DNA from: Rebecca billardiae RCC1528
Taxonomy: Eukaryota; Protista; Haptophyta
Assembly (NCBI GenBank): GCA_965240325.2
Contig: OZ251241.1
Coordinates: forward strand, 744,001-808,000
Length of the DNA: 64,000 nt
Direction: 5' to 3'
Shown: piece by piece, positions 2,980 through 50,188 of the stretch
Position numbering within the stretch: position 1 is the stretch's first letter
Layout: the number at the start of each line of letters is the position of its first letter
Program-made: the position numbers and the translations under genes
The notes under the pieces: model-generated
The model's input: only the letters and a program-made list of their open reading frames with translations
Told to the model about the DNA's origin: nothing
Database searches by the model: none

Positions 2980-3335
2980 GAGCGACTAGCCACTGACAAG
3001 CCACGCGCTGGTGGCACCGAGCCTGCGGCCTGCGGGCGAGCGGCTGCTGCCTGAATCGATGCCGACGGCGACAGTCCGATGTGACGCATGCGCCGCCGTA
3101 CGCAGGCAGTAGTGCTGCGCGCCACTCGCGGGTCCTCAGCGGCACACCGGAGCTTGTTACGAGTTGTGCACAGTGCAGCGCTGGGGCTGGTGGTGTGCGG
3201 TGCGCGGGTGCGATCGAGCAGGCCCGCCGGCGCGGTGCGTGCTCCCGTGCAAGGAACTGATGGGGCGAACTCGTGTCCCCAGCCCCAGGAACGACCAAAA
3301 AACGTTTTAAAAAAGGAAAAATACCGTACAGACTG

Positions 3336-11166: not shown

Positions 11167-11287
11167 TCGGCTGGTTCGCGCTGAGTGAGTGCTGAGTGAG
11201 TACTGCTAAGTGCGGCAATCACCGCCGACACTGCGAGCGGGCCGCCCGCCCCTTCCCGCCCCCCCGCGTGCGGGCCGACCGGGCGCG
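11167..11287. promoter_or_regulatory. Putative bidirectional promoter (121 bp) with tandem GCTGAGTGAGT x2
   Basis: Divergent starts at 11166(-) and 11288(+); direct repeat at 11180-11201. Confidence 0.4.
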
Positions 11288-16615: not shown

Positions 16616-19600
16616 ATGCGAGTCACTCGCAGCTGGCTCGCAGCTGCGCTGAGTCTGCTCCTCCTCGCCGCGCCGGTGGCCTCGCAACCGAGCCCGCCGC
16701 CGAGCCCGCCGCCGAGCCCGCCGCCAAGCCCGCCTCCGAGCCCGCCTCCGAGCCCGCCGCCATCGCCGCCGCCCAGCCCGCCGCCGAGCCCGCCGCCGTC
16801 GCCGCCGCCGAGCCCGCCGCCTCCAAGCCCGCCGCCGAGCCCCCCGCCATCGCCGCCGCCGAGCCCGCCGCCGAGCCCGCCGCCGTCGCCGCCGCCGTCG
16901 CCGCCGCCGTCGCCGCCGCCGAGCCCGCCGCCGTCGCCGCCGCCGAGCCCACCGCCGAGCCCGCCGCCACCATCGCCACCGCCATCCCCGCCACCCAGCC
17001 CGCCGCCAAGCCCACCGCCATCGCCTCCACCGAGCCCGCCGCCGTCACCTCCGCCCAGCCCTCCGCCGTCGCCACCGCCCAGCCCACCGCCGTCGCCGCC
17101 GCCGAGCCCACCGCCGAGCCCGCCGCCGCCGAGCCCGCCGCCATCGCCGCCGCCCAGCCCACCGCCGAGCCCGCCGCCGTCGCCGCCGCCGTCGCCGCCG
17201 CCGTCGCCGCCGCCAAGCCCGCCGCCGAGCCCGCCGCCATCGCCGCCGCCGAGCCCGCCGCCGAGCCCGCCGCCGTCGCCGCCGCCGTCGCCGCCGCCGT
17301 CGCCGCCGCCAAGCCCACCGCCGAGCCCGCCGCCGCCGACGCCACCGCCATCCCCGCCACCCAGCCCGCCGCCAAGCCCACCGCCGTCCCCTCCACCGAG
17401 CCCGCCGCCATCGCCTCCGCCTAGCCCTCCGCCGTCGCCACCGCCCAGCCCACCGCCATCGCCGCCGCCGAGCCCGCCGCCGAGCCCGCCGCCGCCGTCG
17501 CCACCGCCGTCGCCACCGCCATCGCCACCGCCGTCACCTCCGCCAAGCCCGCCGCCCTCACCGCCACCGAGCCCACCGCCATCGCCGCCGCCGTCCCCGC
17601 CGCCATCGCCGCCGCCTAGCCCGCCTCCGTCACCGCCACCGAGCCCGCCCCCGCCGTCACCACCGCCTTCGCCGCCGCCATCACCACCACCGAGCCCGCC
17701 GCCATCGCCGCCCCCGTCGCCACCGCCGTCGCCGCCGCCGAGCCCACCACCGAGCCCGCCGCCCTCGCCGCCACCGAGCCCACCACCGAGCCCGCCACCC
17801 AGCCCACCCCCACCTTCGCCGCCACCGTCGCCTCCCCCCAGCCCGCCTCCAAGCCCGCCGCCCTCACCGCCGCCCTCACCACCGCCAAGCCCACCGCCGA
17901 GCCCACCGCCGAGTCCACCGCCGCCGAGCCCGCCTCCATCCCCGCCGCCATCTCCACCACCGAGCCCGCCGCCGAGCCCGCCACCGAGCCCGCCGCCGAG
18001 CCCACCGCCGAGCCCGCCGCCCAGCCCTCCACCGCCGTCACCGCCGCCATCGCCCCCGCCGTCACCGCCCCCGAGCCCGCCGCCATCCCCGCCGCCCTCC
18101 CCGCCGCCGAGCCCACCGCCGTCGCCTCCACCGTCACCGCCGCCGAGCCCACCGCCGAGCCCGCCCCCGAGCCCACCGCCATCTCCGCCACCGAGCCCGC
18201 CACCGAGCCCACCACCGTCGCCGCCTCCGCCGAGCCCACCGCCAAGCCCGCCCCCCTCGCCGCCTCCATCGCCGCCGCCGAGCCCGCCGCCGAGCCCGCC
18301 ACCTTCACCGCCGCCCTCCCCACCCCCCAGCCCGCCCCCGAGCCCGCCCCCCAGCCCGCCGCCTTCTCCGCCCCCGCCGAGCCCACCGCCGAGCCCACCG
18401 CCATCCCCGCCGCCGTCCCCGCCACCGTCCCCGCCGCCGTCCCCGCCGCCATCGCCGCCGCCGAGCCCGCCGCCATCGCCACCGCCGAGCCCGCCGCCAA
18501 GCCCGCCGCCGAGCCCACCGCCGAGCCCACCGCCGAGCCCACCGCCAAGCCCGCCGCCATCGCCGCCACCACCAAGCCCACCGCCGAGCCCGCCGCCTTC
18601 GCCACCACCGTCGCCGCCTCCATCGCCGCCGCCGTCGCCGCCGCCGAGCCCGCCGCCATCGCCGCCGCCGAGCCCGCCACCGAGCCCACCGCCGAGCCCA
18701 CCGCCGAGCCCGCCGCCGAGCCCGCCTCCAAGCCCGCCGCCGAGCCCGCCGCCGTCACCTCCACCGCCGAGCCCGCCGCCTTCCCCACCGCCGTCACCGC
18801 CGCCGTCCCCGCCGCCAAGCCCGCCGCCAAGCCCGCCACCTTCACCGCCGCCAAGCCCACCGCCGTCTCCGCCGCCCAGCCCGCCACCCAGCCCTCCGCC
18901 GAGCCCGCCGCCGAGCCCGCCGCCGAGCCCGCCGCCGAGCCCACCGCCTTCGCCACCGCCGCCGAGCCCGCCGCCGTCACCGCCGCCAAGCCCGCCACCG
19001 TCTCCGCCACCAAGCCCACCGCCCTCACCGCCACCAAGCCCACCACCATCGCCGCCGCCGAGCCCGCCGCCAAGCCCGCCGCCGAGCCCGCCACCATCGC
19101 CGCCGCCCTCACCACCACCGTCGCCGCCACCGAGCCCACCACCGTCGCCACCGCCTCCGAGCCCGCCGCCGAGCCCGCCGCCGAGCCCGCCGCCGAGCCC
19201 GCCGCCATCTCCGCCACCCAGTCCGCCGCCCTCGCCGCCGCCGTCGCCTCCGCCGAGCCCGCCGCCGAGCCCACCGCCGAGCCCGCCTCCGTCGCCACCG
19301 CCGCCGAGCCCGCCGCCATCGCCGCCACCGAGCCCCCCGCCGTCACCGCCTCCATCGCCGCCGCCGTCGCCGCCGCCGAGCCCGCCGCCATCGCCGCCGC
19401 CCAGCCCGCCGCCAAGCCCGCCGCCGAGTCCACCGCCGAGCCCGCCGCCCTCGCCGCCGCCGAGCCCGCCGCCGAGCCCGCCACCGAGCCCGCCGCCGCC
19501 AAGCCCACCACCAAGCCCGCCCCCGTCGCCACCACCGAGCCCGCCACCCAGCCCGCCTCCCAGCCCCCCACCCTCACCGCCACCATCGCCGCCGCCGAGC

Positions 19601-22600
19601 CCGCCGCCAAGCCCGCCGCCGAGCCCGCCGCCGTCTCCACCGCCGAGCCCGCCGCCCAGCCCGCCGCCGAGCCCGCCGCCGTCACCACCTCCTCCGAGCC
19701 CACCGCCGAGCCCGCCGCCGTCGCCACCCCCTTCGCCACCGCCCAGTCCGCCTCCATCACCCCCACCTTCACCGCCGCCAAGCCCACCTCCGAGCCCGCC
19801 GCCGAGCCCACCGCCGAGCCCGCCGCCGAGCCCGCCGCCGAGCCCGCCGCCGAGTCCACCACCGTCTCCGCCGCCCTCGCCGCCGCCGCCGAGCCCACCC
19901 CCGAGCCCACCGCCGTCGCCACCCCCTTCGCCACCGCCCAGCCCGCCCCCATCACCACCACCTTCACCGCCGCCAAGCCCACCTCCGAGTCCGCCGCCGA
20001 GCCCGCCGCCGAGCCCGCCGCCGAGCCCGCCTCCAAGCCCGCCGCCGAGCCCGCCGCCAAGCCCGCCGCCGTCGCCACCTCCTCCGAGCCCGCCACCAAG
20101 CCCGCCGCCGAGCCCACCGCCCTCGCCGCCACCCTCACCGCCGCCGTCGCCGCCGCCGTCGCCGCCGCCAAGCCCGCCTCCGAGCCCGCCCCCAAGCCCG
20201 CCGCCAAGCCCGCCGCCGAGCCCACCACCGTCGCCGCCGCCGAGTCCGCCGCCCTCGCCGCCGCCCTCGCCGCCACCGCCGAGCCCACCCCCGAGCCCAC
20301 CGCCGTCGCCACCCCCTTCGCCACCGCCCAGCCCGCCTCCATCACCACCACCTTCACCGCCGCCAAGCCCACCACCGAGCCCGCCGCCCAGCCCGCCGCC
20401 CAGCCCTCCGCCCAGCCCGCCGCCCAGCCCGCCGCCCAGCCCGCCCCCGAGCCCGCCGCCGTCACCACCGCCCCCGAGCCCGCCGCCAAGCCCGCCGCCG
20501 AGCCCACCACCTTCACCACCGCCCTCGCCGCCGCCATCGCCGCCGCCCTCGCCGCCGCCAAGCCCGCCTCCGAGCCCGCCCCCAAGCCCGCCACCGTCGC
20601 CGCCGCCGAGCCCACCTCCGTCGCCGCCGCCGAGTCCGCCGCCCTCGCCGCCGCCCTCGCCGCCGCCGCCGAGCCCACCACCGAGTCCACCACCGTCGCC
20701 GCCGCCGTCGCCACCGCCCAGCCCGCCTCCATCACCACCACCTTCACCGCCGCCAAGCCCGCCGCCGAGCCCGCCGCCGAGCCCACCGCCCAGCCCGCCA
20801 CCGAGCCCGCCGCCGAGCCCGCCGCCGAGTCCACCACCGTCTCCGCCGCCCTCGCCGCCGCCGCCGAGCCCACCCCCGAGCCCACCGCCGTCGCCACCCC
20901 CTTCGCCACCGCCCAGCCCGCCCCCATCACCACCACCTTCACCGCCGCCAAGCCCACCTCCAAGCCCGCCCCCAAGCCCGCCGCCCAGCCCGCCACCGAG
21001 CCCGCCGCCCAGCCCGCCGCCGAGTCCACCACCGTCTCCGCCGCCCTCGCCGCCGCCGCCGAGCCCACCCCCGAGCCCACCGCCGTCGCCACCCCCTTCG
21101 CCACCGCCCAGCCCGCCCCCATCACCACCACCTTCACCGCCGCCAAGCCCACCTCCGAGCCCGCCGCCGAGCCCACCGCCCAGCCCGCCGCCGAGCCCGC
21201 CGCCCAGCCCGCCGCCGAGTCCACCACCGTCTCCGCCGCCCTCGCCGCCGCCGCCGAGCCCACCCCCGAGCCCACCGCCGTCGCCACCCCCTTCGCCACC
21301 GCCCAGCCCGCCTCCATCACCACCACCTTCACCGCCGCCAAGCCCACCTCCAAGCCCGCCCCCAAGCCCGCCGCCCAGCCCGCCACCGAGCCCGCCGCCC
21401 AGCCCGCCGCCGAGTCCACCACCGTCTCCGCCGCCCTCGCCGCCGCCGCCGAGCCCACCCCCGAGCCCACCGCCGTCGCCACCCCCTTCGCCACCGCCCA
21501 GCCCGCCCCCATCACCACCACCTTCACCGCCGCCAAGCCCACCTCCGAGCCCGCCGCCGAGCCCACCGCCCAGCCCGCCACCGAGCCCGCCGCCCAGCCC
21601 GCCGCCGAGTCCACCACCGTCTCCGCCGCCCTCGCCGCCGCCGCCGAGCCCACCCCCGAGCCCACCGCCGTCGCCACCCCCTTCGCCACCGCCCAGCCCG
21701 CCCCCATCACCGCCACCTTCACCGCCGCCAAGCCCACCTCCGAGCCCGCCCCCAAGCCCGCCGCCCAGCCCGCCACCGAGCCCGCCGCCCAGCCCGCCGC
21801 CGAGTCCACCACCGTCTCCGCCGCCCTCGCCGCCGCCGCCGAGCCCACCCCCGAGCCCACCGCCGTCGCCACCCCCTTCGCCACCGCCCAGCCCGCCCCC
21901 ATCACCACCACCTTCACCGCCGCCAAGCCCACCTCCGAGCCCGCCGCCGAGCCCGCCGCCCAGCCCTCCGCCCAGCCCGCCGCCCAGCCCGCCGCCCAGC
22001 CCGCCGCCGAGCCCGCCGCCGTCACCACCGCCTCCGAGCCCGCCACCAAGCCCGCCGCCGAGCCCACCGCCCTCGCCGCCACCCTCGCCGCCGCCGTCGC
22101 CGCCGCCCTCGCCGCCGCCAAGCCCGCCTCCGAGCCCGCCCCCAAGCCCGCCACCGTCGCCGCCGCCGAGCCCACCACCGTCGCCGCCGCCAAGTCCGCC
22201 GCCCTCGCCGCCGCCCTCGCCGCCGCCGCCGAGCCCACCACCGAGCCCACCGCCATCGCCGCCGCCGTCGCCGCCGCCGAGCCCGCCTCCATCACCACCA
22301 CCTTCACCGCCGCCAAGCCCGCCGCCGAGCCCGCCGCCCAGCCCGCCGCCCAGCCCTCCGCCGAGCCCGCCGCCGAGCCCGCCGCCGAGCCCGCCGCCGA
22401 GCCCGCCGCCGTCACCACCGCCTCCGAGCCCGCCGCCGAGCCCGCCTCCGTCCCCGCCACCGTCCCCCCCGCCGAGCCCCCCGCCAAGCCCGCCGCCGTC
22501 GCCACCGCCAAGCCCACCGCCATCTCCGCCGCCCAGCCCGCCACCGTCGCCGCCACCATCGCCGCCGCCGAGCCCACCGCCCAGCCCACCACCGAGTCCG

Positions 22601-25600
22601 CCACCGAGGCCGCCGCCGAGTCCGCCACCGTCGCCACCTCCGAGCCCACCACCGTCACCGCCGCCGAGCCCACCGCCCAGCCCGCCGCCATCGCCACCGC
22701 CGAGTCCGCCGCCCAGCCCACCGCCGAGCCCGCCGCCATCGCCACCGCCATCTCCGCCGCCGAGCCCGCCACCGTCGCCGCCACCGTCGCCGCCTCCCAG
22801 CCCGCCACCGCCGAGTCCTCCGCCCTCTCCGCCACCGTCGCCGCCGCCCTCGCCACCACCGTCCCCACCACCTCCGAGCCCGCCTCCATCGCCGCCACCC
22901 TCGCCGCCGCCTTCGCCGCCGCCCAGCCCGCCACCTTCGCCGCCGCCCAGCCCGCCACCAAGCCCACCGCCCAGCCCGCCACCGTCGCCGCCACCATCGC
23001 CGCCGCCGAGCCCACCGCCCAGCCCACCACCGAGTCCGCCACCGAGGCCGCCGCCGAGTCCGCCACCGTCGCCACCTCCGAGCCCACCACCGTCACCGCC
23101 GCCGAGCCCACCGCCCAGCCCGCCGCCATCGCCACCGCCGAGTCCGCCGCCCAGCCCACCACCGAGTCCGCCGCCGTCGCCTCCGCCGTCGCCGCCACCG
23201 AGGCCGCCACCGTCGCCACCGCCGAGCCCACCACCGTCGCCGCCGCCGAGCCCGCCGCCGTCGCCACCGCCGAGCCCACCACCGTCGCCGCCGCCGAGCC
23301 CACCGCCCAGCCCGCCGCCATCGCCGCCGCCGAGCCCACCGCCCAGCCCACCACCGAGTCCGCCACCGAGGCCGCCGCCGAGTCCGCCACCGTCGCCACC
23401 TCCGAGCCCACCACCGTCACCGCCGCCGAGCCCACCGCCCAGCCCGCCGCCATCGCCACCGCCGAGTCCGCCGCCCAGCCCACCGCCGAGCCCGCCTCCA
23501 TCGCCACCGCCAACTCCGCCGCCGTCGCCGCCGCCAAGCCCGCCGCCCTCGCCGCCGCCCTCACCGCCGCCGTCCCCACCACCCAGCCCGCCACCAAGTC
23601 CACCTCCAAGCCCGCCGCCGAGCCCTCCGCCGTCGCCACCGCCATCGCCGCCTCCGAGTCCTCCGCCATCGCCACCGCCGTCTCCCCCGCCGTCTCCCCC
23701 ACCGAGCCCACCGCCGAGCCCGCCGCCATCCCCACCACCGAGCCCGCCGCCAAGCCCACCTCCGAGCCCGCCGCCAAGCCCTCCACCGTCGCCGCCGCCG
23801 TCGCCACCCCCGAGCCCACCACCGTCACCACCGCCGTCGCCACCTCCATCACCGCCGCCGAGCCCACCGCCGTCGCCGCCGCCCTCACCACCACCATCAC
23901 CGCCGCCAAGCCCGCCGCCGTCACCACCACCGTCACCACCGCCCTCGCCACCGCCCTCGCCTCCGCCCTCGCCACCACCGAGCCCTCCACCCTCGCCGCC
24001 GCCATCCCCGCCGCCGAGCCCGCCGCCATCACCGCCACCGTCGCCACCACCCAGCCCCCCGCCAAGCCCCCCACCCTCGCCGCCACCGTCGCCCCCGCCA
24101 AGCCCGCCGCCGAGCCCGCCACCGTCTCCACCGCCGTCGCCGCCTCCATCGCCACCACCATCACCGCCGCCTTCGCCACCACCCAGTCCACCGCCATCGC
24201 CACCACCGTCTCCGCCACCTAGCCCACCACCCAGCCCTCCGCCGAGCCCGCCGCCGAGCCCGCCTCCGAGCCCGCCACCGAGCCCGCCGCCCTCGCCACC
24301 CCCATCGCCGCCACCGAGCCCGCCGCCGTCTCCGCCACCGAGCCCACCACCGTCGCCGCCGCCATCGCCGCCACCATCCCCGCCGCCTTCGCCGCCGCCG
24401 TCGCCACCTCCCAGCCCGCCGCCGAGCCCGCCGCCAAGCCCGCCGCCGAGCCCGCCGCCATCGCCGCCGCCGAGTCCGCCACCATCGCCGCCGCCGAGCC
24501 CACCGCCATCGCCGCCGCCAAGCCCGCCGCCGTCGCCGCCGCCGAGCCCGCCGCCATCACCGCCGCCGAGCCCGCCACCATCGCCGCCACCGTCGCCGCC
24601 GCCATCGCCACCTCCCAGCCCGCCGCCGAGCCCGCCACCGAGCCCGCCACCAAGCCCGCCGCCGAGCCCGCCGCCGAGCCCGCCGCCGTCACCGCCGCCG
24701 AGCCCGCCACCATCGCCACCGCCGAGCCCACCCCCATCACCGCCACCGTCGCCACCGCCATCGCCACCTCCCAGCCCGCCGCCGAGCCCGCCACCGAGCC
24801 CGCCGCCAAGCCCGCCGCCGAGCCCGCCGCCGAGCCCGCCGCCGTCACCGCCGCCAAGCCCGCCACCATCGCCACCGCCGAGCCCGCCTCCATCACCGCC
24901 GCCGAGCCCGCCGCCCTCGCCGCCACCGTCGCCGCCGCCAAGCCCGCCGCCCTCGCCGCCACCATCACCGCCGCCGTCGCCGCCGCCATCGCCACCTCCC
25001 AGCCCGCCGCCGAGCCCGCCACCGAGCCCGCCGCCAAGCCCGCCGCCGAGCCCGCCGCCGAGCCCGCCGCCGTCACCGCCGCCGAGCCCGCCGCCATCGC
25101 CGCCACCGAGCCCGCCTCCATCACCGCCGCCGAGCCCGCCGCCCTCGCCGCCACCGTCGCCGCCGCCAAGCCCGCCGCCCTCGCCGCCACCATCACCGCC
25201 ACCGTCGCCGCCGCCATCGCCACCTCCCAGCCCGCCGCCGAGCCCGCCACCGAGCCCGCCGCCAAGCCCGCCGCCGAGCCCGCCGCCGAGCCCGCCGCCG
25301 TCACCGCCGCCGAGCCCGCCGCCATCGCCGCCACCGAGCCCGCCTCCATCACCGCCGCCGAGCCCGCCGCCCTCGCCGCCACCGTCGCCGCCGCCGAGCC
25401 CGCCGCCCTCGCCGCCACCATCACCGCCACCGTCGCCGCCGCCATCGCCACCTCCCAGCCCGCCGCCGAGCCCGCCACCGAGCCCGCCGCCAAGCCCGCC
25501 GCCAAGCCCGCCGCCGAGCCCGCCGCCGTCACCGCCGCCGAGCCCGCCACCATCGCCGCCACCGAGCCCGCCTCCATCGCCGCCGCCGAGCCCGCCGCCC

Positions 25601-28600: not shown

Positions 28601-29017
28601 AGCCCGCCGCCGCCGAGCCCGCCGCCGAGCCCGCCGCCGAGCCCGCCGCCGTCTCCGCCGCCGAGCTCTCCACCGTCGCCGCCGCCATCGCCGCCACCCA
28701 GCCCGCCGCCCAGCCCGCCGCCCGCGCCGCCCCCTTTGCCGCCGCCGAGCCCACCGCCCAGCCCGCCCCCTCCGAGCCCGCCGCCGCCGCCAAGCTCGCC
28801 GCCGCCGCCACCACGGATCAGCCCGCTCCCGCCGCCGCCGCCGCCTTTCCCGCCGCCCACCCCGCCGCCGTCGCCGCCACCCAGCCCGCCGCCGAGCCCG
28901 CCGCCCGCGCCGCCCCCTTCGCCGCCGCCCAGCCCGCCGAGCAGCCCGCCGCCGCCGCCGCCGAGCCCGCCGCCGTCGCCGAGCCCGCCGCCGCCGAGCT
29001 CGCCGCCGCCGCCGAGC

Positions 29018-29051
<34 letters not shown>

Positions 29052-32000: not shown

Positions 32001-35000
32001 CGACGCTGTGCTACCAGTTCGTCGGGCTGCCGTGGACCGCCTTCGCCTCCTCCACCATCTCCGTCGCCTTCTCCGCCAACCCGTTTGCGCTGATCGACGT
32101 GCAGCGCGTGACGCCGACAGGCTCCGCGTTCGGCGCCGGCACCGAGATCGCAATCTCGGGGAGCTCGGGCTTCGAGGCGGACGCGGCGGACGTGGCGGCG
32201 GGCGTGCAGCGCATCGCGGAGTGGCACGCGAGCGCGGAGCGCATCGCCGCCGCCGGCGACTCCGGCGCCTCCGCCTTCTGCCGCTTCTCCGGCTTCAGCC
32301 AGGAGCCGACGACGCGGCTCACGCCCATCCAGTCCGTCGGCAGCGCGCGGCTCAGGTGTGCCGCGCCCGCCGACACGGTGCGCGTGGACACGGTGACGCT
32401 CGAGCTGGTCGCGCTGGGCTGCGACGAGGCGGAGGCGGCGAGCGGCGTGTGCGACCCCGTCGCCGTGACCAAGCGCTACTCGATCTACCGCCTCTCCGAG
32501 GTGCGCGCGCTGCGCATCACGCCGGCGGGCACTCCCCAAGGGCTGGACAACAATCGCATCACGGTGTCGGGCTGGGAGGCGGGCGGCGGGCGGCTCGACG
32601 CGTACAAGGACCTGGGCCGGCTGACCGCGCGCGTGCGGCTGCCGTCGGGCCGCACGCGCGACGTCTCCGGCACCCTCCCGGACCAGGGCCTCTCCGACCT
32701 CCTCACAGTCCTGCCCTACGTCTCGCCGGTCGGCGTGGGCACGCGCCTCACGCTCGCGGTCGACGTCTCGCTCGACGGCGCGTCCTTCACGGCGGACAGC
32801 CCGACGTTCACGATGTACAACGCGCTGGTGGAGGCGGGCGCGCCGGCGGGCGGCGCGATCGGCGCGACGTCCGCGCTCACGCTCGAGGGCGTCGGCTTCG
32901 TCAAGCTGCGCGACGACCAGGACGTGGCCACGTGCATCTACACGCGCGACGGGCGCTCGAGCTCCGTGCCCGCGGCCGTGCTCAGCGAGCAGGCGGCGGT
33001 GTGCGCCGCGCCGGCGGACGCGCGCGCGGGCGTGTACGAGGTGTCGCTCTCGCTGAACGGCGGGTTCCACGTCGACCCGTTCTCGTTCGACCCCGTCGAG
33101 TTCGAGCTGTACGACATCGACGGCGTGAGCGTGAGCGCCGTCGAGCCGCCCGGAGGGCCGGTGGGCGGCGGCACGGTCGTCACGCTCTCGGGCTCAGGCT
33201 TTGCCGACTACGGCACCGCCGCGGGCGTCGCGCAGCTGGGCTGCGTGGTGACGGGCGCGGACGGCGTGCCCTCCGCGCCGATCGGCGCGACGCTGCTCCC
33301 CAACCCGCCGCGCGTGCAGTGCGAGATGCCGCCCGCGCCCGCCGGCGCCGCGGGCAACGTGACCGTCGAGGTGACGCTGAACGCTGGCGCGCCCGGCACC
33401 GTCACGGCCTCGGGTCAGCACTTCATGTACTACGCGCCGCCGACGCTGTCGTCGATCTCGTCGACGAGCGCGGCGGCGGACGGCGGCGAGCTCGTCACGA
33501 TCGGCGGCACGGGCTTCGACGGGCTGCGCGCGTTCGACCCCGCGCTCGGCCGCTACCTGCGCGTGCGCTTCGGCTCGGTCGTCGCCCGGCCGCCGGTCGA
33601 GTTCGACGCCGCAAGCGTGAGCGTGCGCACGCCGTACGGCGACGAGGGGCCGCGCGCGGTGACGGTCTCGCTGAACGGGCAGCAGTGGAGCGACGCGTCG
33701 GACGGCGTGAGCATCGAGTACGTCGGGCTGCACGCGCCCGAGATCGCGCTCGCGCGCTTCTCCGAGCTCGGCACGTTCCTCGAAGTTTCGTTCGGGGCGC
33801 AGCCGACCGACCGCGCGGGCATGCAGAGCGTGGGCGCGTGCGCGGAGGTGCTGGACGAGGAGACGGTGGCGACGCTGCGCGGGGCGGGCACCGGCGCGCC
33901 GCAGTGCTACTGGCAGGACGACGTCACGCTGATCGCGTACCTCACCATCCAGACCGCCGCCGCGCCGGGCATGACCGTGCGCACGCGCGCGGGCGCGCTC
34001 GCGCCGCGCGCCACGCCCGCCGGCTCGAGCCCCAAGTTCGCCAACAGCTCGTACGTCGTCGACCCGGACTTCCCGTGCGGCGGGCGCACGGCGCCGTGCG
34101 CCACGCCGAGCGTCACGCTCGCCGGCATGACCGCCATCTCCGCGTGCCCGTCCGACGTCCTCCGCATCGACGGCACCGAGACGGCGCGCGGCGGTCTCAA
34201 GCCCCTCACCTACCAGTGGCGCGTCGACCCGTCGGTCTCCGACTTCGCCGCCGAGCTGAACGCGCGGCTGCGCGCGCTCGACGGCACGGCGAGCCGCGTG
34301 CTCGAGCTCGGCGAGCTGCGCGGCGACGGCTGGACCTTCCAGGTGCGCGTGCGCTCCTTCCTCGGCGTGTGGTCGCCGCTGGCGCGGTGGCGCGTCGAGC
34401 GCACGCCCTTCCCGTCGCCCTCGATCCGAATGGAAGTGCCGGCGCTGCTCGAGGTGAAGCCGTCGGAGGAGCGGATGCTCACGGCGACCACGTCGACGGC
34501 GCCGTGCTTCGAGGGGGCCAACGGCATCGCCTTCAGCTGGACCCACGTGCAGACCGTCGTCACCGCCACGGGCGCGGCGGTGGGCGCGGCGTCGGCGGTT
34601 CCACCCGCCCTCTCGAGCGCGCTCGCGGCCGCGACCACGCCGCAGCTGCTCATCCCCGGGCTGACGCTCACGCCGGGCAACAGCTACACGCTGCGCTTCA
34701 ACGCGAGCATGGTGTCCGAGCCCTCCGCCTCCTCCTCCGCGCAGCTCACCCTCGCCGTCACCGACGAGCCGCTCGTCGTGCTCGTCGCCTCGCCCACCCG
34801 GCAGGTGTCGGAGTCGGCGACTGTCGTGATCGATGGCTCGGCGTCCTACGACCCGAACGACCCGACGGACGCGCTGTCGAGCTTCGAGTTCTCGCTGGTG
34901 GGCTCGCCCGCGGTGGAGGTGCTGCCGTCGTACTACTCGGACGACGGCCGCGTCGTCACGCTGCCGCCGGGCACGCTGCGCGCGGGCACCACCTACACGT

Positions 35001-38000
35001 TCACCTTCCGCGGCGCCAAGGGCGAGCGCGAGGCGTCGGCGTCGCTCAGCGTGGGCGTGCTGGCCGAGCCCGTTCCGACGGTCGAGATCTCGTCGTCGGT
35101 GGCCGCGCTCAAGCTGAACGCGAACGAGCAGCTCAAGCTCATCGGCGCCGCGGAGCAGCCCGGCGGCGGCTCCTCCGAGTACACGTACGCGTGGAGCCTC
35201 TCGGCCGGCCCGGCGCTCGGCAGCTCGCTGCAGGCCGCCACCACGACGGGGCTGAACAAGGAGAACCTGGTGCTCAAGCCGGGCGTGCTCGCGCCCGGCG
35301 CGGTGTACACGTTCCGGCTGTCGGCGACGGAGCGCGGCGGGAGCGCGGGCACGGCGTTCGCCGAGCTCACCATCCTGACCAACCGCCCGCCATTCGGCGG
35401 CGTCGTCAGCTCGAGCCCGAGCGCAGGCAGCGCGCTGCTCACGCGGTTTGAACTCGAGGCCGCGGGCTGGACGGACGACGACCCGAACGACCTGCCGCTC
35501 ACGTACCGCTTCTGCGAGGGGAGCAAGGTGCTGACGGAGCAGTCGCTCTCCAAGTTCGCCTCGATGTTCCTCGACGCGGGCACGCACGAGATCACCGTCG
35601 AGGTCTACGACTTCTACAACGGGCGCGGCGCCGCCTCGGTCGAGGTCGAGGTGGGCGCGACCACGGTCACGCGCCAAGTCACCAGCCAGACGCTCGGCAC
35701 CTCCGGGCAGATCGTGTCGGAGGGGCGCGCGAACGAGGGGCTCTCGCTGCTCAACGCGCTCTCGCGCGCCTCCGGCGGCGGCCGCGCCCGCGGCGCCGCC
35801 GCCAACCGCCGCGCGCTGCAGCTCGACGAAGACACGCTCGTCGCCGGCACCAACGTCACGTATGCGCAGGCGCGGGCGTCCGAGATGATCGATCTCGTGC
35901 GGCGCGCGCAGCTGTCGCAGCTCGCGACGGACTCGACGGTGGCGATCGTGGTGCAGGCGCTGGCCGACGCGATCGACATCGAGCCGAGCGCCGTGCTCGT
36001 CCCCGCGCAGCTCGTCGCCGTCGCCGTGCTCAAGCTGGCCGCGGGCGCGGCGAGCGGCGCGCTCGCCGCTGACGCTCGAACGCTGATGCTCACCGCGGCC
36101 GATCAGCTGTTCACCGCCATCGACAGCGCGGCGGAGGCGGAGGCGGCGGCGCTCGCGGCGGCGCCGAACGCCACTGAGCCGGGCGTCACGCCGTTCAACG
36201 CCTCCGACCCCGCGGACGCGCTCCGCCTCTCCGCCGCCGAGCTCACTGACTTCGTGTTGCACTCGTTCATGCCGGTGCTTCTGGCCGGCACGGTCGCGGG
36301 CGAGGAGCCCGCGTCGCTCAGCTTCCCGTCGCTCGCCGTGCTCGCGTCGCGCGTGCTCGGCGCGGGGCTGCCGGGCGCGCAGATCGGCGCGCCCGACGGC
36401 GGCGCGCTCGTCTCGCTCCCCGCCGGCGACTCCCTCCTCGGCGCGCTCGGCGCCGCCGCCGCCGACGCGGTGTCCCTCATGCTGGTCGAGTGGAAGCGCG
36501 ACACGCGCACCGGCTTCGATGTGCGCGCGCCGACGGTGCTCGCGCCGCCGCTGTCGTTCTGGCTCGCGGACGGCGACGGCGCGGAGTACGCGGTGAGCCG
36601 GCTCGGCGCGAGCGGCCTCATCCAGATCTCGATCCCAGTGCCGCCGCAGCCGGCGGTCACGGGCGCGGGCAACTGCACCGAGTTCGCCCTGTGCTCGGGC
36701 AACGGCGCGTGCGTCGACGGCGGCTGCGCGTGCGCGGACGGCTGGTTCGGCCCGTCGTGCGACCTGCGCGCGCGCTGCGCGTACTGGGACGAGGCGGCGC
36801 TCGGCTGGCGCCTCGGCGGCGTGCGCACGCGCGCCTACTTCAACGGCACGCTCACGTGCGCCACCGACCACCTGACAGAGTTCGGGGCGCTTGGGCTCGC
36901 GCCCGCCGAGCCAGACGTTGACAGCGGCGGCGGCGGCGGCGGCGGCGAGGAGAGCGAGGCGTCGTCGGGCTCGCAGGTGTCGGGGATCGCGGAGACGCTG
37001 TTCACCTCGGTCGGGCTGATCGCCGCCGTCGCCGTGCTCTCTGGCGTCACGCTCGTCGTCGTCGTCGGCACGAGCGTCGCCGAGGCGCGCGTGCCGCTCG
37101 GCGTGCGCAACACGGCGCGGCTGCAGCGCGCGGCCGCGCGCTCGGCCGTCGCGGCCAAGCACCGGCTGCAGGCGCGCAAGCCGTCGGAGGCGCGGCTGCC
37201 GTTCGGCATGCGCGTGCGGTATGCGCTCGAGGACAACTTCTCCCTCCTCGCCCTCTCGATCGGCGAGGCGGAGCCCGGGCTCACGCGCCCCGCTCTCGCA
37301 CTCACGGTGTGCACGCAGCTGATGCTGCAGCTGTGTCTGCAGGCGGCCTTCTTCTCGGGCGCGCTGGGCTGGCTGGGGCCGGAGGCGGTGGGCACGGCGT
37401 CGGGCGGCGGCCTCGCGCTGCACGCGACGCTGTGCGCGCTCCTTGCGCTGCCCGCGCTCTACCTGACGCGCGTGCTCTTCGCCCTCGGCCACAGCCTGCC
37501 GTGGTCCGCGTACCCGTGGCGGCTGGTGCGCGGCGCGGTGGTGACGGTGGCTTATGCGGCGGGCGGGCGGCGGCGGCGGTGGGACCGGGCGCGGCGGCCG
37601 AGCAGCTCGCGCTCGGCGTCGCGGCCGACGACGGCAGGGGGCGTAGGGCAGACCACGCCGGTCCCGACCGCCGAGGCCGAGCGCGCCTCCGCCGCGGGCC
37701 GCCCGCCGCCGCCCTCGGACCTGCCCCCCGTGCAGGAGGCGGAATCGTCGCCGGCGGTCGCGCCGGGCGCGCCCGCGGGCGCGGACGGCGGCGGCTCGAT
37801 GCAGAAGCGCACGGGCGCGACGCCGCCCGCCGCGCGGCCGATGCCGCCGCCCACCGGCCCGCCGGGGCTGCAGCCGCCCACTGTGCGCCCCATCCAAACC
37901 CGCGTGCCCCCGCCCGCCGGCCTGCGCGAGCGCATCGGCGTGCCCTACATCAACCCCGGCTCCGTGGCGCACTCGCGCGCGGGCTCTGAGATCAGCGGCC

Positions 38001-39833
38001 CGTCGTGCGCGAGCCGGGCGGGTGTGCCCTCGGCCGCGGCGGCGCAGCTGCGCGCGCAGCAGCGCAGCGAGGCGCTGCGCGCGCGCATCCCGCCGCCCGC
38101 GCCGGGCGGCGCCGGCGCGGACGGCGGCGGCGGCGCGGCCGCCTCCCAGCCCGTCCCGATGAAGCGAGATCGCGTGCCGCCGCCGTGGGAACTGTCGAAG
38201 CGGCTCTCGTCTCAAGGCTCGCAGGGGCAGACCCCGCCAAAGGGGTCGGGCGCGAGCGCGGCGGGCGCGAGCGCGGCGAGCGCTCCGCCGCCGCGCGCCG
38301 CCGCAGCCGCCGCTGCGCCCGCCGCGGCCGGCGCGGCGTCGACGCCAGATACGCAGCGCCGCACGCGCGCGCCCGTGCCGCCGCCGCCCGCCGGCGGCCC
38401 CAACTCACAGCAAGGGCCGGCGCCCGGCAGCGGGCGACGCTCGTCGGGAGCGGGCGCGCCCGGCGCGGCGCCGAGCGGCAGCACGCCGCCGCGCGTCGTC
38501 GGCGGCGCCACCCCCGGAGCGCGCCGCGCGCCGCTCGGCGCAGGCCGCGCCCCCTCCACCGGCACTCGGTGTGCGCACGCGCGCGCGCGCCCGCCGCGCG
38601 AGCGCCCTGCCGCCGCGCGCGCACGCGCGCGCGGGCGGCCGCGCCGCGCCGCGCCGCGCCGCCGCGCGGCCGCGCGCACGCCGCCGCTCACGCGCCCGCG
38701 GCCGCCCCCGCGCGCGCGCCGCGCAGCGTGACGCCCGTGCGTGGCGGCGCTGCCCCTGGCCCCGGCGCGAGGCCCGCCCTGGACATCTCGCGCGACTCGT
38801 CCCTGCTCCGCACGAGCGCGCAGCAGCGGCCGCAGGCGACTCGCGTGGAGGTGCCGGCGGCGGGCGGCGCGCCGCCGGCGCCGACTCCGGCGCCGGCACC
38901 GACCGAGGGGCCTGCTGAGCCGCCGCCGCCGCAGCCGCCGCCCTCGCCCGGCGCGCCGAGCCCGCCGCACAGCCCGCGCTACGCCGCCAGCCTGCCGCCG
39001 CCCTCGCCCGGCGCGCCGAGCCCGCCGCCGCGCAGCCCGCGCGTGCTCGCCACAAGTCTGCCTCCCAGCCCGCGCGGGCCATCGGAGCCCGCGGACGAGC
39101 CGATGGCGGCGGCGGAGGCCGGCGGCGGCGGCGGCGGCGAAGCGGCGGCCGTGCAGCCCGCGCCGCCGCGCCCCACCCCCGCCACGCTAGGCTCGCAGCC
39201 CACGGCGGGCATCTTCAACCTGCAGGCGCTACAGACCGCCGCCGGCGCCGCGCCCAAGGGCGGCAAGTACTCCGTCGACGACGAGGGCGGCGCTGGGCAC
39301 GCCAAGACGCGCTCGCCCGCAGAGATGGCCAAGGTGCGCGCAGGGCTGCGCGGGCGCGCACCGCGCAGCGCGCGCGCGCGCTCAGCCCTGACTGAGTCTG
39401 CGCGCACGCCCTCGTCCGCCCACCGCCCCGCCCCGCCCGCCTCCGCGCGCGCCCCGCGCCGCCCCGCGCCGCCGGCTCGCCGCCCCGCGCCGCCCGCAGC
39501 TGATTGCTGGCTGGGCCGTGCAGGTGGGCCTCTTTGCGGCGCTCGCGGCCGTGTGTCTGGTGCTCGGCATCGGCCTCGATCCGGACACGACGGCCCTGGC
39601 CCTGGGCGCATGGGCGGTGCGCGCACGCCCCGCGTGCACCGGCCGCGCCGGCGCGCGCGCGCGCCTCACCCAAGCAGCACACCAACACGCGCGCCTGACA
39701 CCCACGCGCCACCCGCGCCTCGGCCTTGCAGATCGCGACGGCGGAGACCTTCGTGGCCTTCGAGCCGCTCGCGATCGTGATCTCCGCCATCTTCTCGCAC
39801 ATCGTCGCCGGTGTGCTCGGCACCGAGACCTGA
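16616..39833 (+). CDS. Giant polycystin-1-like (REJ/GPS) membrane protein with (SPPP)n extensin-like rod, ~7,590 aa (exons 16616-38568, 38727-39333, 39500-39616, 39732-39833)
   Basis: Signal peptide MRVTRSWLAAALSLLLLAAPVAS; ~4,160 aa of SPPP; nine GxGVxxGD...LCYxF modules; about five IPT/TIG-like repeats (e.g. VEPPGGPVGGGTVVTLSGSGF); REJ-like (IDGSASYDPND, NRPPFGG...GWTDDDPNDLPLTYRF); EGF (CSGNGACVDGGCACADGWFGPSC); GPS (CAYWDE...W...CATDHL/TEFG). TM1-3 lie in exon 1. Three GT-AG introns add TM4 and TM5 (...TFVAFEPLAIV...) and a stop, all in frame. Confidence 0.85.
16688..29176 (+). repeat. Coding 12-nt tandem repeat (Ser-Pro-Pro-Pro)n, ~12.5 kb, with 195-nt and 228-nt higher-order units
   Basis: AGC/TCN CCN CCN CCN repeated about 1,000 times; synonymous-codon landmarks recur every 195 nt (about 19.9-21.9 kb) and every 228 nt (about 24.8-26.6 kb). 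Confidence 0.97.

Positions 39834-50127: not shown

Positions 50128-50188
<61 letters not shown>

What the first reader, a model, noticed from the sequence alone, without database searches (positions are those of the whole stretch)
16616..39833. Giant polycystin-1-like receptor with a micrometre-scale (Ser-Pro3)n antenna and no channel domain: candidate core of a flagellar hair or surface filament
Seen: signal peptide, ~4,160 aa of nearly pure SPPP, nine Cys-bearing beta modules, about five IPT/TIG, REJ, EGF, GPS with intact HL/T, then five TM helices. The last two helices appear only after splicing three introns, and the protein stops where a polycystin channel domain would begin. Established: REJ+GPS+TM1-5 is the polycystin-1 N-terminal architecture; SP3-5 tracts are hydroxyproline-O-glycosylated polyproline-II rods in extensins and green-algal HRGPs; PPII rises about 0.31 nm per residue. 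I recall that the Chlamydomonas mastigoneme axial protein (Mstax/MST3) is also a very large polycystin-like protein with a glycosylated PPII tract. Inference: the rod could be ~1.3 micrometres long and sits distal to the globular domains, so it would act as an antenna or filament axis rather than a stalk. It would be anchored by a channel-less polycystin that needs a PKD2-like partner: a possible haptophyte mechanosensory hair or adhesion system.
Basis: partly seen in the sequence, partly recalled or inferred. Interest (0 to 1): 0.9.

Follow-up and report, generated by a model that had tools for sequence, protein, structure and literature searches.

The report
Giant membrane-anchored proline-rich rod protein
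A very GC-rich alga of the Pavlovales (haptophytes) encodes a 7,592-residue membrane protein, more than half of it a Ser-Pro-Pro-Pro repeat that could form a sugar-coated rod about 1.3 micrometres long on a polycystin-1-type anchor with no ion-channel part, which makes it a good candidate gene for a cell-surface or flagellar hair.

Summary
One gene (16616-39833, + strand, four exons) encodes a signal peptide and a 4,128-residue S/P tract. After the tract come nine Ig-like modules, about five TIG-like domains, REJ (E 2.9e-49), an EGF, a GPS with HL|T, and five TM helices.

The tract is coding and not a degenerate microsatellite. It uses 128 spellings of SPPP, all variation is synonymous, and more than 90% of its 60-mers are unique. 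The three 3' introns share one donor consensus, and they restore a TM4-TM5 hairpin that intron-free homologues show.

Ten homologues end just after TM5. No PLAT or PKD-channel sequence exists anywhere in the window. GPS+TM1 and TM4-5 match the same elements of an amphioxus polycystin-1-type protein (hhalign E 4.6e-6 and 2.2e-5). It therefore belongs to a channel-less, PLAT-less REJ-GPS-5TM branch of the PKD1 superfamily that is expanded in Pavlovales. Paralogues carry IQ and EF-hand motifs in their cytoplasmic loops.

The function is inferred: an O-glycosylated polyproline-II fibril held on a cleavable GPS junction. The closest analogues are Chlamydomonas MST3 (a different anchor) and the TLP-4 glycofibril (gene unknown). 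Flagellar location and a PKD2 partner were not tested.

The parts
16616..16684 (+). Start codon and signal peptide (residues 1-23)
   Evidence: First in-frame ATG of the ORF. It has a basic n-region, a 13-residue hydrophobic core and a VAS|Q cleavage-like site. This is a judgement by eye; no predictor was run.
16688..22912 (+). S/P tract, part 1: SPPP units punctuated by one SPPPP, every 65 residues (195 nt) over residues ~535-1933
   Evidence: Adjacent 195-nt super-repeats are about 75% identical at the DNA level. The exception is six or seven recent copies (93-98% identical) at about 20.7-21.9 kb.
22913..28603 (+). S/P tract, part 2: about 475 uninterrupted SPPP units (no SPPPP for 1,913 residues)
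   Evidence: In this part 90% of 60-mers are unique.
28604..29179 (+). Degenerating end of the tract and P-rich linker to the first globular module
   Evidence: Across the last 41 tract codons plus the next 12, compared with homologue L001, 27 codons are identical, 19 differ synonymously and 7 non-synonymously, only 2 of those in the tract.
29180..32095 (+). Nine Ig-like two-Cys beta-sandwich modules
   Evidence: Self-alignment. AlphaFold2 of module 4 gives pLDDT 91. Foldseek top hits are all Ig-like, at E about 0.06 and probability 0.9. There is no Pfam or PDB sequence match.
32096..33733 (+). Five TIG/IPT-like domains
   Evidence: Pfam TIG scores 38.1 and 34.8 bits for units 5 and 4, 16.9 for unit 3, 12.8 for unit 1 and nothing for unit 2.
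34592..35698 (+). REJ domain
   Evidence: Pfam PF02010, E 2.9e-49, 168 bits. A search of all protein representatives gave 2,181 REJ-type hits.
35699..36688 (+). Helix-rich then beta-rich region before the GPS (presumed GAIN domain)
   Evidence: Based on position and composition only. Pfam gave no hit and no structure was modelled. Inference.
36689..36763 (+). EGF-like domain
   Evidence: Pfam EGF_Teneurin, E 7.2e-7, 29.6 bits. It also shows weak PDB matches to reelin EGF repeats (E 0.12-0.19).
36773..36892 (+). GPS motif. The predicted cleavage is between Leu and Thr of HLT (Thr codon 36875-36877)
   Evidence: Pfam GPS scores 16 bits, below the cutoff. The motif aligns with CxCxHLTxF of homologues. 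hhalign against an amphioxus polycystin-1-type protein gives E 4.6e-6.
37010..37078 (+). TM1
   Evidence: Hydropathy. AlphaFold2 models a helix at the equivalent place in P0006. It is covered by the same hhalign match.
37295..37483 (+). TM2-TM3 hairpin
   Evidence: TM3 passes my hydropathy scan. TM2 is called from the sequence, the alignment with homologues and the AlphaFold2 helices of P0006.
37484..38568 (+). Cytoplasmic TM3-TM4 loop, first part (end of exon 1). It is disordered and P/A/R-rich, with conserved islands (RERIGVP; MKR[DE]RVPPPWEL[ST]KR)
   Evidence: The islands are conserved in the window, P0001 and P0006. RVxP occurs 3 times against 0.44 expected.
38569..38726 (+). Intron 1 (158 nt, GTGTGCGCAC...CGCAG)
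   Evidence: Frame-keeping donor and acceptor search. It removes the in-frame stop at 38729-38731. The acceptor is uncertain: 38772 and 38817 are also possible.
38727..39333 (+). Exon 2: second part of the cytoplasmic loop
   Evidence: It aligns to the intron-free homologue P0006 (GIFNL..., GKYSVDDE...).
39334..39499 (+). Intron 2 (166 nt, GTGCGCGCAG...CCGCAG)
39500..39616 (+). Exon 3: TM4
   Evidence: It is part of the TM4-5 module matched to amphioxus polycystin-1-type TM4-5.
39617..39731 (+). Intron 3 (115 nt, GTGCGCGCAC...TTGCAG)
   Evidence: An annotated intron of a Diacronema lutheri paralogue has a similar donor (GTGCGA) and the same GCAG acceptor.
39732..39833 (+). Exon 4: TM5, a 7-residue tail and the stop codon (TGA 39831-39833)
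   Evidence: The stop position is conserved in P0006, P0002, P0003, L001 and six paralogues.

Best explanation
Shown. This is one gene for a 7,592-residue (740 kDa before modification) multi-pass membrane glycoprotein of a pavlovophyte haptophyte. It has:
- a signal peptide;
- an N-terminal (SPPP)n tract of about 1,000 units, under strict amino-acid-level selection, with no domain at its free end;
- a base of nine Ig-like and about five TIG-like domains;
- REJ, an EGF and a GPS with intact HL|T;
- a polycystin-1-type TM1-5 module that ends 7 residues after TM5, with no PLAT and no channel domain.

Inferred mechanism.
1. In the ER and Golgi the prolines are hydroxylated. Hyp and Ser are then O-glycosylated, as in extensins and in MST1/MST3 of Chlamydomonas.
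2. This turns the tract into a stiff polyproline-II rod of about 1.28 micrometres, sheathed in carbohydrate.
3. The rod projects from the cell or flagellar surface on a folded stalk (about 55 nm if each of the 14 domains spans ~4 nm, my assumption).
4. Autoproteolysis at the GPS leaves the rod held non-covalently on the 5-TM stub.
5. The globular domains sit next to the membrane and the rod is distal, so the rod itself is the working part (a hair, brush or tether) and not a spacer.
6. Drag or contact force on the rod loads the GPS junction. The result is either a signal through the stub and its long cytoplasmic loop, or release of the fibril. Paralogues carry IQ and EF-hand motifs in the corresponding loops.
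For: Coding repeat:
- There are 128 spellings of SPPP, and all four Pro and all six Ser codons are used.
- All 2,324 differences from the consensus in 950 units fall at synonymous sites. About 1,470 non-synonymous codons would be expected if they fell at random, against 16 non-S/P residues in the whole tract.
- The tract end is conserved with the homologue L001, with 19 synonymous changes.

Assembly:
- The longest exact internal repeat is 266 nt, and more than 90% of 60-mers are unique.

Gene end:
- All three introns share a GTG[TC]GCGCA donor and a GCAG acceptor.
- The spliced C-terminus matches the intron-free P0006.
- Ten homologues end 6-35 residues after the TM4-5 module.
- tblastn and Pfam find no PLAT or channel sequence in the window.

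Polycystin-1 relationship:
- hhalign of the family TM4-5 profile against amphioxus polycystin-1-type TM4-5 gives E 2.2e-5. GPS+TM1 gives E 4.6e-6. The control against the channel TMs gives E 0.46.

Topology:
- The positive-inside pattern fits, and paralogues carry EF-hand and IQ motifs in the loops predicted to be cytoplasmic.

Precedents:
- In MST3, a single hydroxyproline-rich chain spans the roughly 800 nm mastigoneme with its N-terminus distal (PMC11015965).
- In TLP-4, a single chain of [S/T]Pxx tetrapeptides makes a free-standing 8 nm glycofibril with a 12.4 A rise per repeat (PMC11725842).
Against: - There is no direct evidence of transcription or translation of the tract, of hydroxylation or glycosylation, of GPS cleavage, or of location.
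- The GPS scores below the Pfam cutoff and has one Cys pair where the canonical motif has two. The P0002 and P0003 relatives have lost HLT, so cleavage is not essential to the family.
- The tract has no Tyr cross-linking motifs and no distal head domain, unlike extensins and MST3.
- Foldseek found no significant match for the 5-TM bundle. PKD1 chains appear only at E 4-10.
- The PDB profile search did not detect human PKD1.
- Copy number within the recent 195-nt amplification at about 20.7-21.9 kb could be misassembled.
Confidence: 0.5

Rival explanations
1. The protein is the axial core of a flagellar hair, analogous to a mastigoneme. It is anchored in the flagellar membrane and works with a PKD2-like channel partner as a mechanosensory unit.
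For: - The MST3 precedent pairs a hydroxyproline rod with a polycystin-type anchor on cilia (PMC11015965).
- In Chlamydomonas, six of seven further proteins with polycystin-type anchors also have polyproline regions (PMC11015965).
- The cytoplasmic loop carries conserved RVxP-type motifs: 3 against 0.44 expected, and one is conserved in three homologues. RVxP is the ciliary-targeting motif of polycystin-2 (PMC3044124).
- From my own knowledge, not checked here: pavlovophyte long flagella bear fine non-tubular hairs.
Against: - There are no localisation data.
- There is no coiled coil or any C-terminal tail that could bind a PKD2 partner; only 7 residues follow TM5.
- No MST1-like sheath partner is known.
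- RVxP is a four-residue motif in a proline-rich loop.
- I did not test whether this organism has a PKD2-like protein.
Confidence: 0.25
2. The protein is a cell-body glycocalyx, mucilage or adhesion component. It would form a mucin-like brush more than 1 micrometre thick, and GPS cleavage would shed it to feed the extracellular matrix or free glycofibrils. Any signalling role would be secondary.
For: - The rod has no distal binding domain, and the globular domains stay at the membrane.
- GPS gives a built-in release point.
- Free single-chain glycofibrils of unknown origin are common in natural water (PMC11725842, 10.1101/2025.09.30.679562).
- Other REJ relatives carry short N-terminal extensin-like tracts.
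Against: - The polycystin-1-type 5-TM module and the long loop with conserved motifs are elaborate for a mere anchor.
- Paralogues carry Ca2+/calmodulin motifs, which suggests signalling.
Confidence: 0.2
3. The tract is not part of the protein, or not at this length. Either it is an assembly over-expansion of a shorter repeat, or it is an untranslated upstream microsatellite and the real protein starts near 29.2 kb.
For: - The homologue's gene model (P0001) starts after the tract, and short-read contigs break inside it.
- Six or seven near-identical 195-nt copies at about 20.7-21.9 kb could be miscounted.
- No transcript evidence was available for the tract.
Against: - The variation is exclusively synonymous, with both Ser codon families in use.
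- No frame-breaking indel occurs in 12.4 kb.
- The only signal peptide for a clearly extracellular ectodomain lies upstream of the tract.
- The window has Val (GTG), not Met, where P0001 starts.
- The tract-to-domain junction is conserved at the protein level in L001.
- More than 90% of 60-mers are unique.
Confidence: 0.05

Closest known systems
Polycystin-1 family (PKD1, PKD1L1-3, PKDREJ; sea urchin SpREJ1-10)
   Same: - It has REJ followed by a GPS with HL|T, immediately before TM1.
- TM1 and the TM4-5 hairpin are homologous to those of an amphioxus polycystin-1-type protein.
- It has a large ectodomain of Ig-like repeats.
- The sea urchin family already spans 1 to 11 TM segments, and only half of its members have PLAT (PMC1934368). 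Channel-less and PLAT-less members therefore have precedent.
   Different: - There is no PLAT/LH2 in the TM1-TM2 loop.
- There is no TM6-11 channel-like domain or polycystin (TOP) domain, and no C-terminal coiled coil.
- The TM3-TM4 loop is about 590 residues and disordered.
- There are no PKD repeats, C-type lectin or LRR.
- An N-terminal 4,128-residue SPPP rod is not mentioned for any PKD1-family protein in the descriptions I read.
Chlamydomonas MST3 (Mstax), the axial protein of the mastigoneme (PMC11015965)
   Same: - It is a giant (8,572-residue) secreted membrane protein. Its hydroxyproline-rich, glycosylated polyproline helices span a hair hundreds of nanometres long.
- Its N-terminus is distal, and its C-terminus is a polycystin-type transmembrane anchor.
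   Different: - The MST3 anchor is a PKD2-like channel domain lacking S1, completed by the small protein SIP. No REJ or GPS is mentioned in the description I read.
- Its proline region is 42 copies of a P13...P11(XXP)3 motif wrapped by MST1, and it has N-terminal C-type lectins.
- Here the anchor is the non-channel half of a PKD1-type protein, the repeat is uniform SPPP, and there is no head domain.
- The resemblance is in architecture. Homology was not shown.
TLP-4 glycofibril from pond water (PMC11725842)
   Same: - It is a single linear chain of tetrapeptide repeats with adjacent Pro and Ser/Thr ([S/T]Pxx or P[S/T]xx), which SPPP fits.
- The rise is 12.4 A per repeat, the same as the 0.31 nm per residue used here.
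- The fibril is held together by its glycan coat alone.
   Different: - The gene and source organism of TLP-4 are unknown.
- Its modified residue is a 3,4-dihydroxyproline, and only one Pro per repeat is defined.
- No membrane anchor is known.
- Nothing here shows that this protein is glycosylated in that way.
Extensins and green-algal HRGPs (SP3-5 modules)
   Same: Ser-Pro3-4 units are the motif for contiguous Hyp arabinosylation and Ser galactosylation, and they form polyproline-II rods.
   Different: - The tract has no Tyr-containing cross-link motifs and no wall-type partner domains.
- The tract is far longer than any I know of (own knowledge, not checked) and is membrane-anchored.
- The lineage has no cell wall (own knowledge, not checked).
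Adhesion GPCRs
   Same: They have a large ectodomain ending in a GPS autoproteolysis motif next to TM1. Force on the N-terminal fragment is a known activation principle.
   Different: This protein has five TM helices, not seven, and no 7tm_2 Pfam match.

Membership tests
Polycystin-1 (PKD1) family | REJ domain in the ectodomain | tested here: met
   Pfam PF02010, E 2.9e-49, covering profile positions 34-425 of 452. Anolis PKD1 (P0149) is a phmmer hit at E 7.7e-18.
Polycystin-1 (PKD1) family | GPS motif (HL|T/S) immediately before TM1 | tested here: met
   CATDHLTEF lies about 45 residues before TM1. Pfam GPS scores only 16 bits (cutoff 22.5). The motif aligns with homologues that pass, and the GPS+TM1 profile matches amphioxus polycystin-1-type P0141 at E 4.6e-6. 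Actual cleavage cannot be tested here.
Polycystin-1 (PKD1) family | PLAT/LH2 domain in the first cytoplasmic loop | tested here: not met
   There is no Pfam PLAT hit, and the TM1-TM2 loop is only about 75 residues. tblastn with the animal post-GPS regions (PLAT onward) finds nothing significant. Of 56 REJ homologues, only 2 (both animal) have PLAT.
Polycystin-1 (PKD1) family | Eleven TM helices, with a C-terminal six-TM channel-like domain (PKD_channel plus polycystin domain) | tested here: not met
   There are five TM helices and a stop 7 residues after TM5. The end is conserved in ten homologues. The window has no PKD_channel or Polycystin_dom sequence.
Polycystin-1 (PKD1) family | TM1-5 homologous to PKD1 TM1-5 | tested here: inconclusive
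   TM1 and TM4-5 match an amphioxus polycystin-1-type protein in register (control). TM2-3 were not aligned. Human PKD1 in the PDB was not detected by profile, and Foldseek gave it only at E 4-10.
Polycystin-1 (PKD1) family | C-terminal coiled coil that binds PKD2 | tested here: not met
   Only 7 residues follow TM5.
MST3-type mastigoneme axial protein | PKD2-like transmembrane domain lacking S1 (completed by SIP) | tested here: not met
   No PKD_channel hit. The definition is from PMC11015965.
MST3-type mastigoneme axial protein | Repeated P13...P11(XXP)3 units and N-terminal C-type lectins | tested here: not met
   The tract is uniform SPPP/SPPPP and starts at the mature N-terminus.
MST3-type mastigoneme axial protein | Presence in isolated flagellar hairs, wrapped by an MST1-like sheath | not testable with these tools
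   This needs proteomics or cryo-EM.
Extensin-type HRGP | Ser-Pro3-5 repeats | tested here: met
   957 SPPP units and about 40 SPPPP units.
Extensin-type HRGP | Tyr-based cross-linking motifs | tested here: not met
   The tract contains no Tyr.
Extensin-type HRGP | Hydroxyproline and O-arabinosyl or O-galactosyl modification | not testable with these tools
   This is a biochemical test.
TLP-4-type single-chain glycofibril | Long run of tetrapeptide repeats with adjacent Pro and Ser/Thr | tested here: met
   About 1,000 tetrapeptide units. SPPP fits the SPxx and PSxx patterns given in PMC11725842.
TLP-4-type single-chain glycofibril | Dihydroxyproline with two glycans plus a glycosylated Ser/Thr, forming an 8 nm glycan-held fibril | not testable with these tools
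   This needs cryo-EM or glycoproteomics.
Adhesion GPCR | Seven-TM secretin-like domain after the GPS | tested here: not met
   There are five TM helices and no 7tm_2 hit.

The most novel reading that the evidence does not exclude
This gene may be the first known genetic source of a free-standing, single-chain glycofibril of the TLP-4 kind, made as the N-terminal fragment of a polycystin-1-type receptor. On this reading the roughly 1.3 micrometre glycan-sheathed SPPP rod is a haptophyte surface or flagellar hair. It is held on its 5-TM stub only by the non-covalent GPS junction. Force on it would be read out by the stub, and breakage would release the fibrils seen in natural waters. It would also mean that green algae and haptophytes independently joined hydroxyproline rods to the two different halves of the polycystin complex.
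Probability: 0.2. Interest if true: 0.85.

Novelty: new variant of a known kind. Interest (0 to 1): 0.7.

Why it matters
- It offers a concrete gene for structures with no known molecular basis in haptophytes: the fine hairs or surface coat of pavlovophytes.
- It gives a testable origin for the single-chain glycofibrils found by cryo-EM in natural water, for which no gene is known.
- It defines a channel-less, PLAT-less REJ-GPS-5TM branch of the polycystin-1 superfamily in protists. The cytoplasmic loops of this branch carry interchangeable signalling modules (EF-hand, IQ, TRAF zinc fingers). This bears on what the non-channel half of polycystin-1 does on its own.
- A 12.4 kb repeat kept perfectly in frame by selection is a striking case of amino-acid-level constraint on a low-complexity sequence. 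It also shows that short-read assemblies and gene callers systematically lose such proteins.

Tried and rejected
- PDB sequence searches with the REJ-to-TM3 region, with P0006, and with profiles of TM4-5 and of the Ig-like modules found no polycystin and nothing informative.
- Foldseek of the AlphaFold2 5-TM model (the P0006 homologue, because the spliced window sequence cannot be given by reference) found nothing at E below 1. Six PKD1 chains appear among the 17 weak hits, which I treat as a hint only.
- The search for homologous proteins with the full-length query, meant to find other giant homologues, timed out twice. The earlier search with the 3,210-residue piece found only P0001.
- Synteny check: the TatD gene downstream of L001 is absent from the window.
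- I first took L001/P0001 for an orthologue. A contig from the same sequencing run is 99.76% identical to the window, so L001 (69% identical) is more likely a paralogue in the same species.
- The intron position in the D. lutheri paralogue P0007 is about 10 residues from the window's intron 3, so the position is not conserved. Only the splice consensus is shared.
- I tested the upstream 2OG-Fe(II) oxygenase as a possible prolyl hydroxylase and rejected it. It is of the small-molecule dioxygenase type (DIOX_N; best PDB relatives include hyoscyamine hydroxylase and an ethylene-forming enzyme).
- The exact-product look-up of the neighbouring MFS ORF found nothing.
- Literature searches for pavlovophyte flagellar hairs returned nothing usable.

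Full report
**Observation**

The window is 70-83% GC around the finding, so long ORFs occur in several frames by chance. The minus strand of the repeat is itself open for 4,234 codons. ORF length therefore proves nothing.

The + strand ORF 16193-38731 has its first in-frame ATG at 16616. That ATG opens a typical signal peptide. Residues 25-4152 consist of Ser and Pro apart from 16 substitutions: 957 SPPP, about 40 SPPPP and a few irregular units.

**Is the tract real coding sequence?**

- The 950 in-register SPPP units have 128 different DNA spellings. They use all four Pro codons and both Ser codon families (AGY 538, TCN 412).
- Codon positions 1 and 2 of every Pro are invariant, and third positions are highly variable.
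- The units differ from the consensus at 20% of bases. If those 2,324 differences fell at random, about 1,470 codons would change amino acid. The whole tract has 16 non-S/P residues.
- No frame-breaking indel occurs in 12.4 kb.
- The longest exact internal repeat is 266 nt, and more than 90% of 60-mers are unique.
- The tract has internal structure. Over residues ~535-1933 there is one SPPPP every 65 residues, a 195-nt super-repeat. Neighbouring copies are only about 75% identical, except for six or seven recent copies (93-98%) at about 20.7-21.9 kb. About 1,900 residues of pure SPPP follow.
- Only the recent amplification is a plausible place for a copy-number error.
- Homologue L001 also begins inside an S/P tract. 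Across the last 41 tract codons and the next 12, it has 27 identical codons, 19 synonymous differences and 7 non-synonymous ones, only 2 of them in the tract.

**Globular part**

- Pfam on the 3,210 residues after the tract gives REJ (E 2.9e-49), TIG (E 4.5e-19), EGF_Teneurin (E 7e-7) and a sub-threshold GPS.
- The nine two-Cys modules align to each other.
- AlphaFold2 with an alignment of the 18 modules from the window and P0001 gives pLDDT 91. Foldseek returns only Ig-like domains, at E about 0.06 and probability about 0.9. They are divergent Ig-like sandwiches with no family-level match.
- Of the five TIG-like units, two pass the Pfam cutoff, one is borderline, one is faint and one has no hit.
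- The GPS reads CATDHLTEF. It aligns with the CxCxHLTxF of relatives whose GPS passes Pfam. It has one Cys pair where the canonical motif has two.

**The 3' end**

- Hydropathy finds TM1 and TM3 in the long ORF. Two further TM segments lie at 39.5-39.8 kb in other frames. TM2 is called from the sequence, the alignment and the P0006 model.
- P0006 is a 765-residue homologue, 49% identical. It comes from JGI sample 3300016846 and is encoded without interruption. It shows GPS, TM1, TM2, TM3, a disordered loop of about 430 residues, TM4, TM5 and then the end.
- Guided by P0006, the window splices as exons 16616-38568, 38727-39333, 39500-39616 and 39732-39833.
- The three introns (158, 166 and 115 nt) all begin GTG[TC]GCGCA and end GCAG. 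An annotated intron in a Diacronema lutheri paralogue has a similar donor (GTGCGA) and the same acceptor.
- The product is 7,592 residues and 740 kDa.
- The acceptor of intron 1 is the weakest point. Three in-frame choices exist.

**No channel domain**

- The TM4-5 module is detectable in ten further proteins. In every one it lies 6-35 residues from the C-terminus.
- L001 has the same last two exons and the same stop.
- Pfam on the larger ORFs between 40.2 and 48.5 kb finds nothing. tblastn with the PLAT-to-end region of an amphioxus polycystin-1-type protein, and with the post-GPS regions of a second amphioxus copy and Anolis PKD1, finds nothing significant in the window.
- Among 56 REJ homologues with a GPS, only two (amphioxus P0141 and Anolis PKD1 P0149) have PLAT, the polycystin domain and PKD_channel. 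Eight have EF-hand pairs.
- In the Pavlovales paralogues, an IQ-like motif sits in the TM1-TM2 loop and an EF-hand pair sits just before TM4. This fixes those loops as cytoplasmic and agrees with the positive-inside pattern.

**Relationship to polycystin-1**

- phmmer with REJ-to-TM3 finds 2,181 proteins, including Anolis PKD1.
- A profile of the family's TM4-5 hairpin aligns with TM4-5 of the amphioxus protein in register. The shared pattern is W...YG..(F/Y)G...W...(E/Q)P, at hhalign E 2.2e-5 and probability 76%.
- The GPS+TM1 profile aligns with its GPS+TM1 at E 4.6e-6 and probability 86%.
- The control against that protein's six channel TMs gives E 0.46.
- Another multi-TM REJ protein, P0036, shows the same hairpin at E 1e-3.
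- Against this, PDB profile searches do not detect human PKD1. Foldseek of the AlphaFold2 5-TM model (pLDDT 75-95 in the helices) has no significant hit, and PKD1 chains appear only at E 4-10.
- PLAT is absent. The TM1-TM2 loop is only about 75 residues.
- I therefore place the protein in the PKD1 superfamily, as a member of a REJ-GPS-5TM branch, and not in polycystin-1 proper.
- Sea urchin SpREJ proteins already range from 1 to 11 TM segments, and half lack PLAT (PMC1934368).

**Organism**

- Named relatives are from Diacronema lutheri and Pavlovales sp. CCMP2436.
- D. lutheri has 73% GC (PMC8379373), and a D. lutheri paralogue locus has 75% GC.
- The neighbouring 2OG-oxygenase product was found exactly only in Logan run ERR14847148, not in the D. 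lutheri assembly. That contig is 99.76% identical to the window.
- The window therefore comes from a pavlovophyte close to Diacronema. L001, from the same run but only 69% identical, is probably a second gene of the same architecture in the same species.

**Mechanism (inferred)**

- SP3-4 is the extensin motif.
- In the Chlamydomonas mastigoneme, hydroxyproline helices with O-glycosylated Hyp and galactosylated Ser form filaments hundreds of nanometres long. The single MST3 chain has its N-terminus distal (PMC11015965).
- In TLP-4, a lone chain of [S/T]Pxx tetrapeptides forms an 8 nm glycan-held fibril with a 12.4 A rise per repeat (PMC11725842).
- Applied here, 4,128 residues give 1.28 micrometres.
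- The rod begins at the mature N-terminus with no head domain, and the folded domains sit at the membrane. The rod is therefore the working element.
- The GPS would make the rod-to-stub junction non-covalent. That junction could act as a force sensor or as a release point.
- The cytoplasmic loop of about 590 residues is disordered but keeps sequence islands shared by three homologues. These include RVPP motifs that fit the RVxP ciliary-targeting consensus of polycystin-2 (3 found, 0.44 expected; PMC3044124). This is a weak pointer to the flagellum.

**Verdict**

The architecture-level interpretation is largely right, with corrections: there is no PLAT, the channel-less form is a family-wide feature, and MST3 has a different anchor. 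The function remains a well-motivated hypothesis.

Noticed in passing
window 11210-13576 (+) and 10060-11166 (-): Two possible modifying enzymes lie 3-6 kb upstream of the giant gene. One is a GT47 (exostosin-type) glycosyltransferase-like ORF (31.7 bits, just under the Pfam cutoff of 33.4; weak PDB match to EXTL3). The other is a 2OG-Fe(II) oxygenase. The oxygenase is of the small-molecule DIOX_N type, not a prolyl hydroxylase. From my own knowledge, GT47 includes a plant extensin arabinosyltransferase, so the neighbour may be worth a look.
   Followed up: partly
window 48796-55269 (-): A 2,158-codon ORF starting with ATG lies in a stretch of about 90% GC. Its product is 43% Ala, 18% Arg and 8% Leu, with a coiled-coil-like pattern and no Pfam hit. 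Several overlapping ORFs in other frames are also open, so whether it is a gene is unclear.
   Followed up: no
L001 (Logan ERR14847148 contig, 12,560 nt), whole locus: This is a second gene with the same architecture: end of an S/P tract, nine Ig-like modules, TIG, REJ, GPS, 5 TM and the same last two exons. It is 69% identical in DNA to the window. It comes from the same sequencing run as a contig that is 99.76% identical to the window, so it is probably a paralogue. The contig breaks inside the S/P tract, and the gene caller started the protein after it.
   Followed up: partly
Paralogues P0007, P0153 and P0155 (Diacronema lutheri, Pavlovales sp. CCMP2436) and other REJ-GPS relatives (P0017, P0044, P0051, P0110): The REJ-GPS-TM scaffold is expanded in Pavlovales and carries varied cytoplasmic modules. 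These include an IQ-like motif in the TM1-TM2 loop, an EF-hand pair before TM4, TRAF zinc fingers after TM5 (P0044), and RhoGAP (P0051) or PH (P0110) domains in other relatives. This suggests a family of surface receptors coupled to Ca2+/calmodulin and other signalling.
   Followed up: partly
P0002 and P0003 (JGI/IMG sequences), GPS position: In these two close relatives of the window's subfamily, the HL|T cleavage triad is replaced (VLGIY and SSGTY) while the rest of the module is kept. GPS autoproteolysis is therefore not universal in the family.
   Followed up: no
window 37484-38568 and 38727-39333 (cytoplasmic loop): The loop is otherwise poorly conserved and P/A/R-rich, but it keeps short conserved islands: RERIGVP, MKR[DE]RVPPPWEL[ST]KR, RAPLGG, GIF[NS]L and GKYxV[DE]DE. 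Two of them contain RVPP, which fits the RVxP ciliary-targeting consensus.
   Followed up: partly
window 18.2-22.4 kb (residues ~535-1933 of the tract): There is a regular 65-residue super-period (15 SPPP plus 1 SPPPP) that is absent from the second half of the tract. In a three-residue-per-turn PPII helix, each extra Pro would shift the angular register of the Ser positions. Whether this matters for glycan packing is unknown.
   Followed up: no
window 53-2986 (+) and 14423-15916 (+): Other neighbours are an ORF with a gelsolin repeat and DUF7904, and an MFS transporter ORF (E 1e-29) directly upstream of the giant gene.
   Followed up: no
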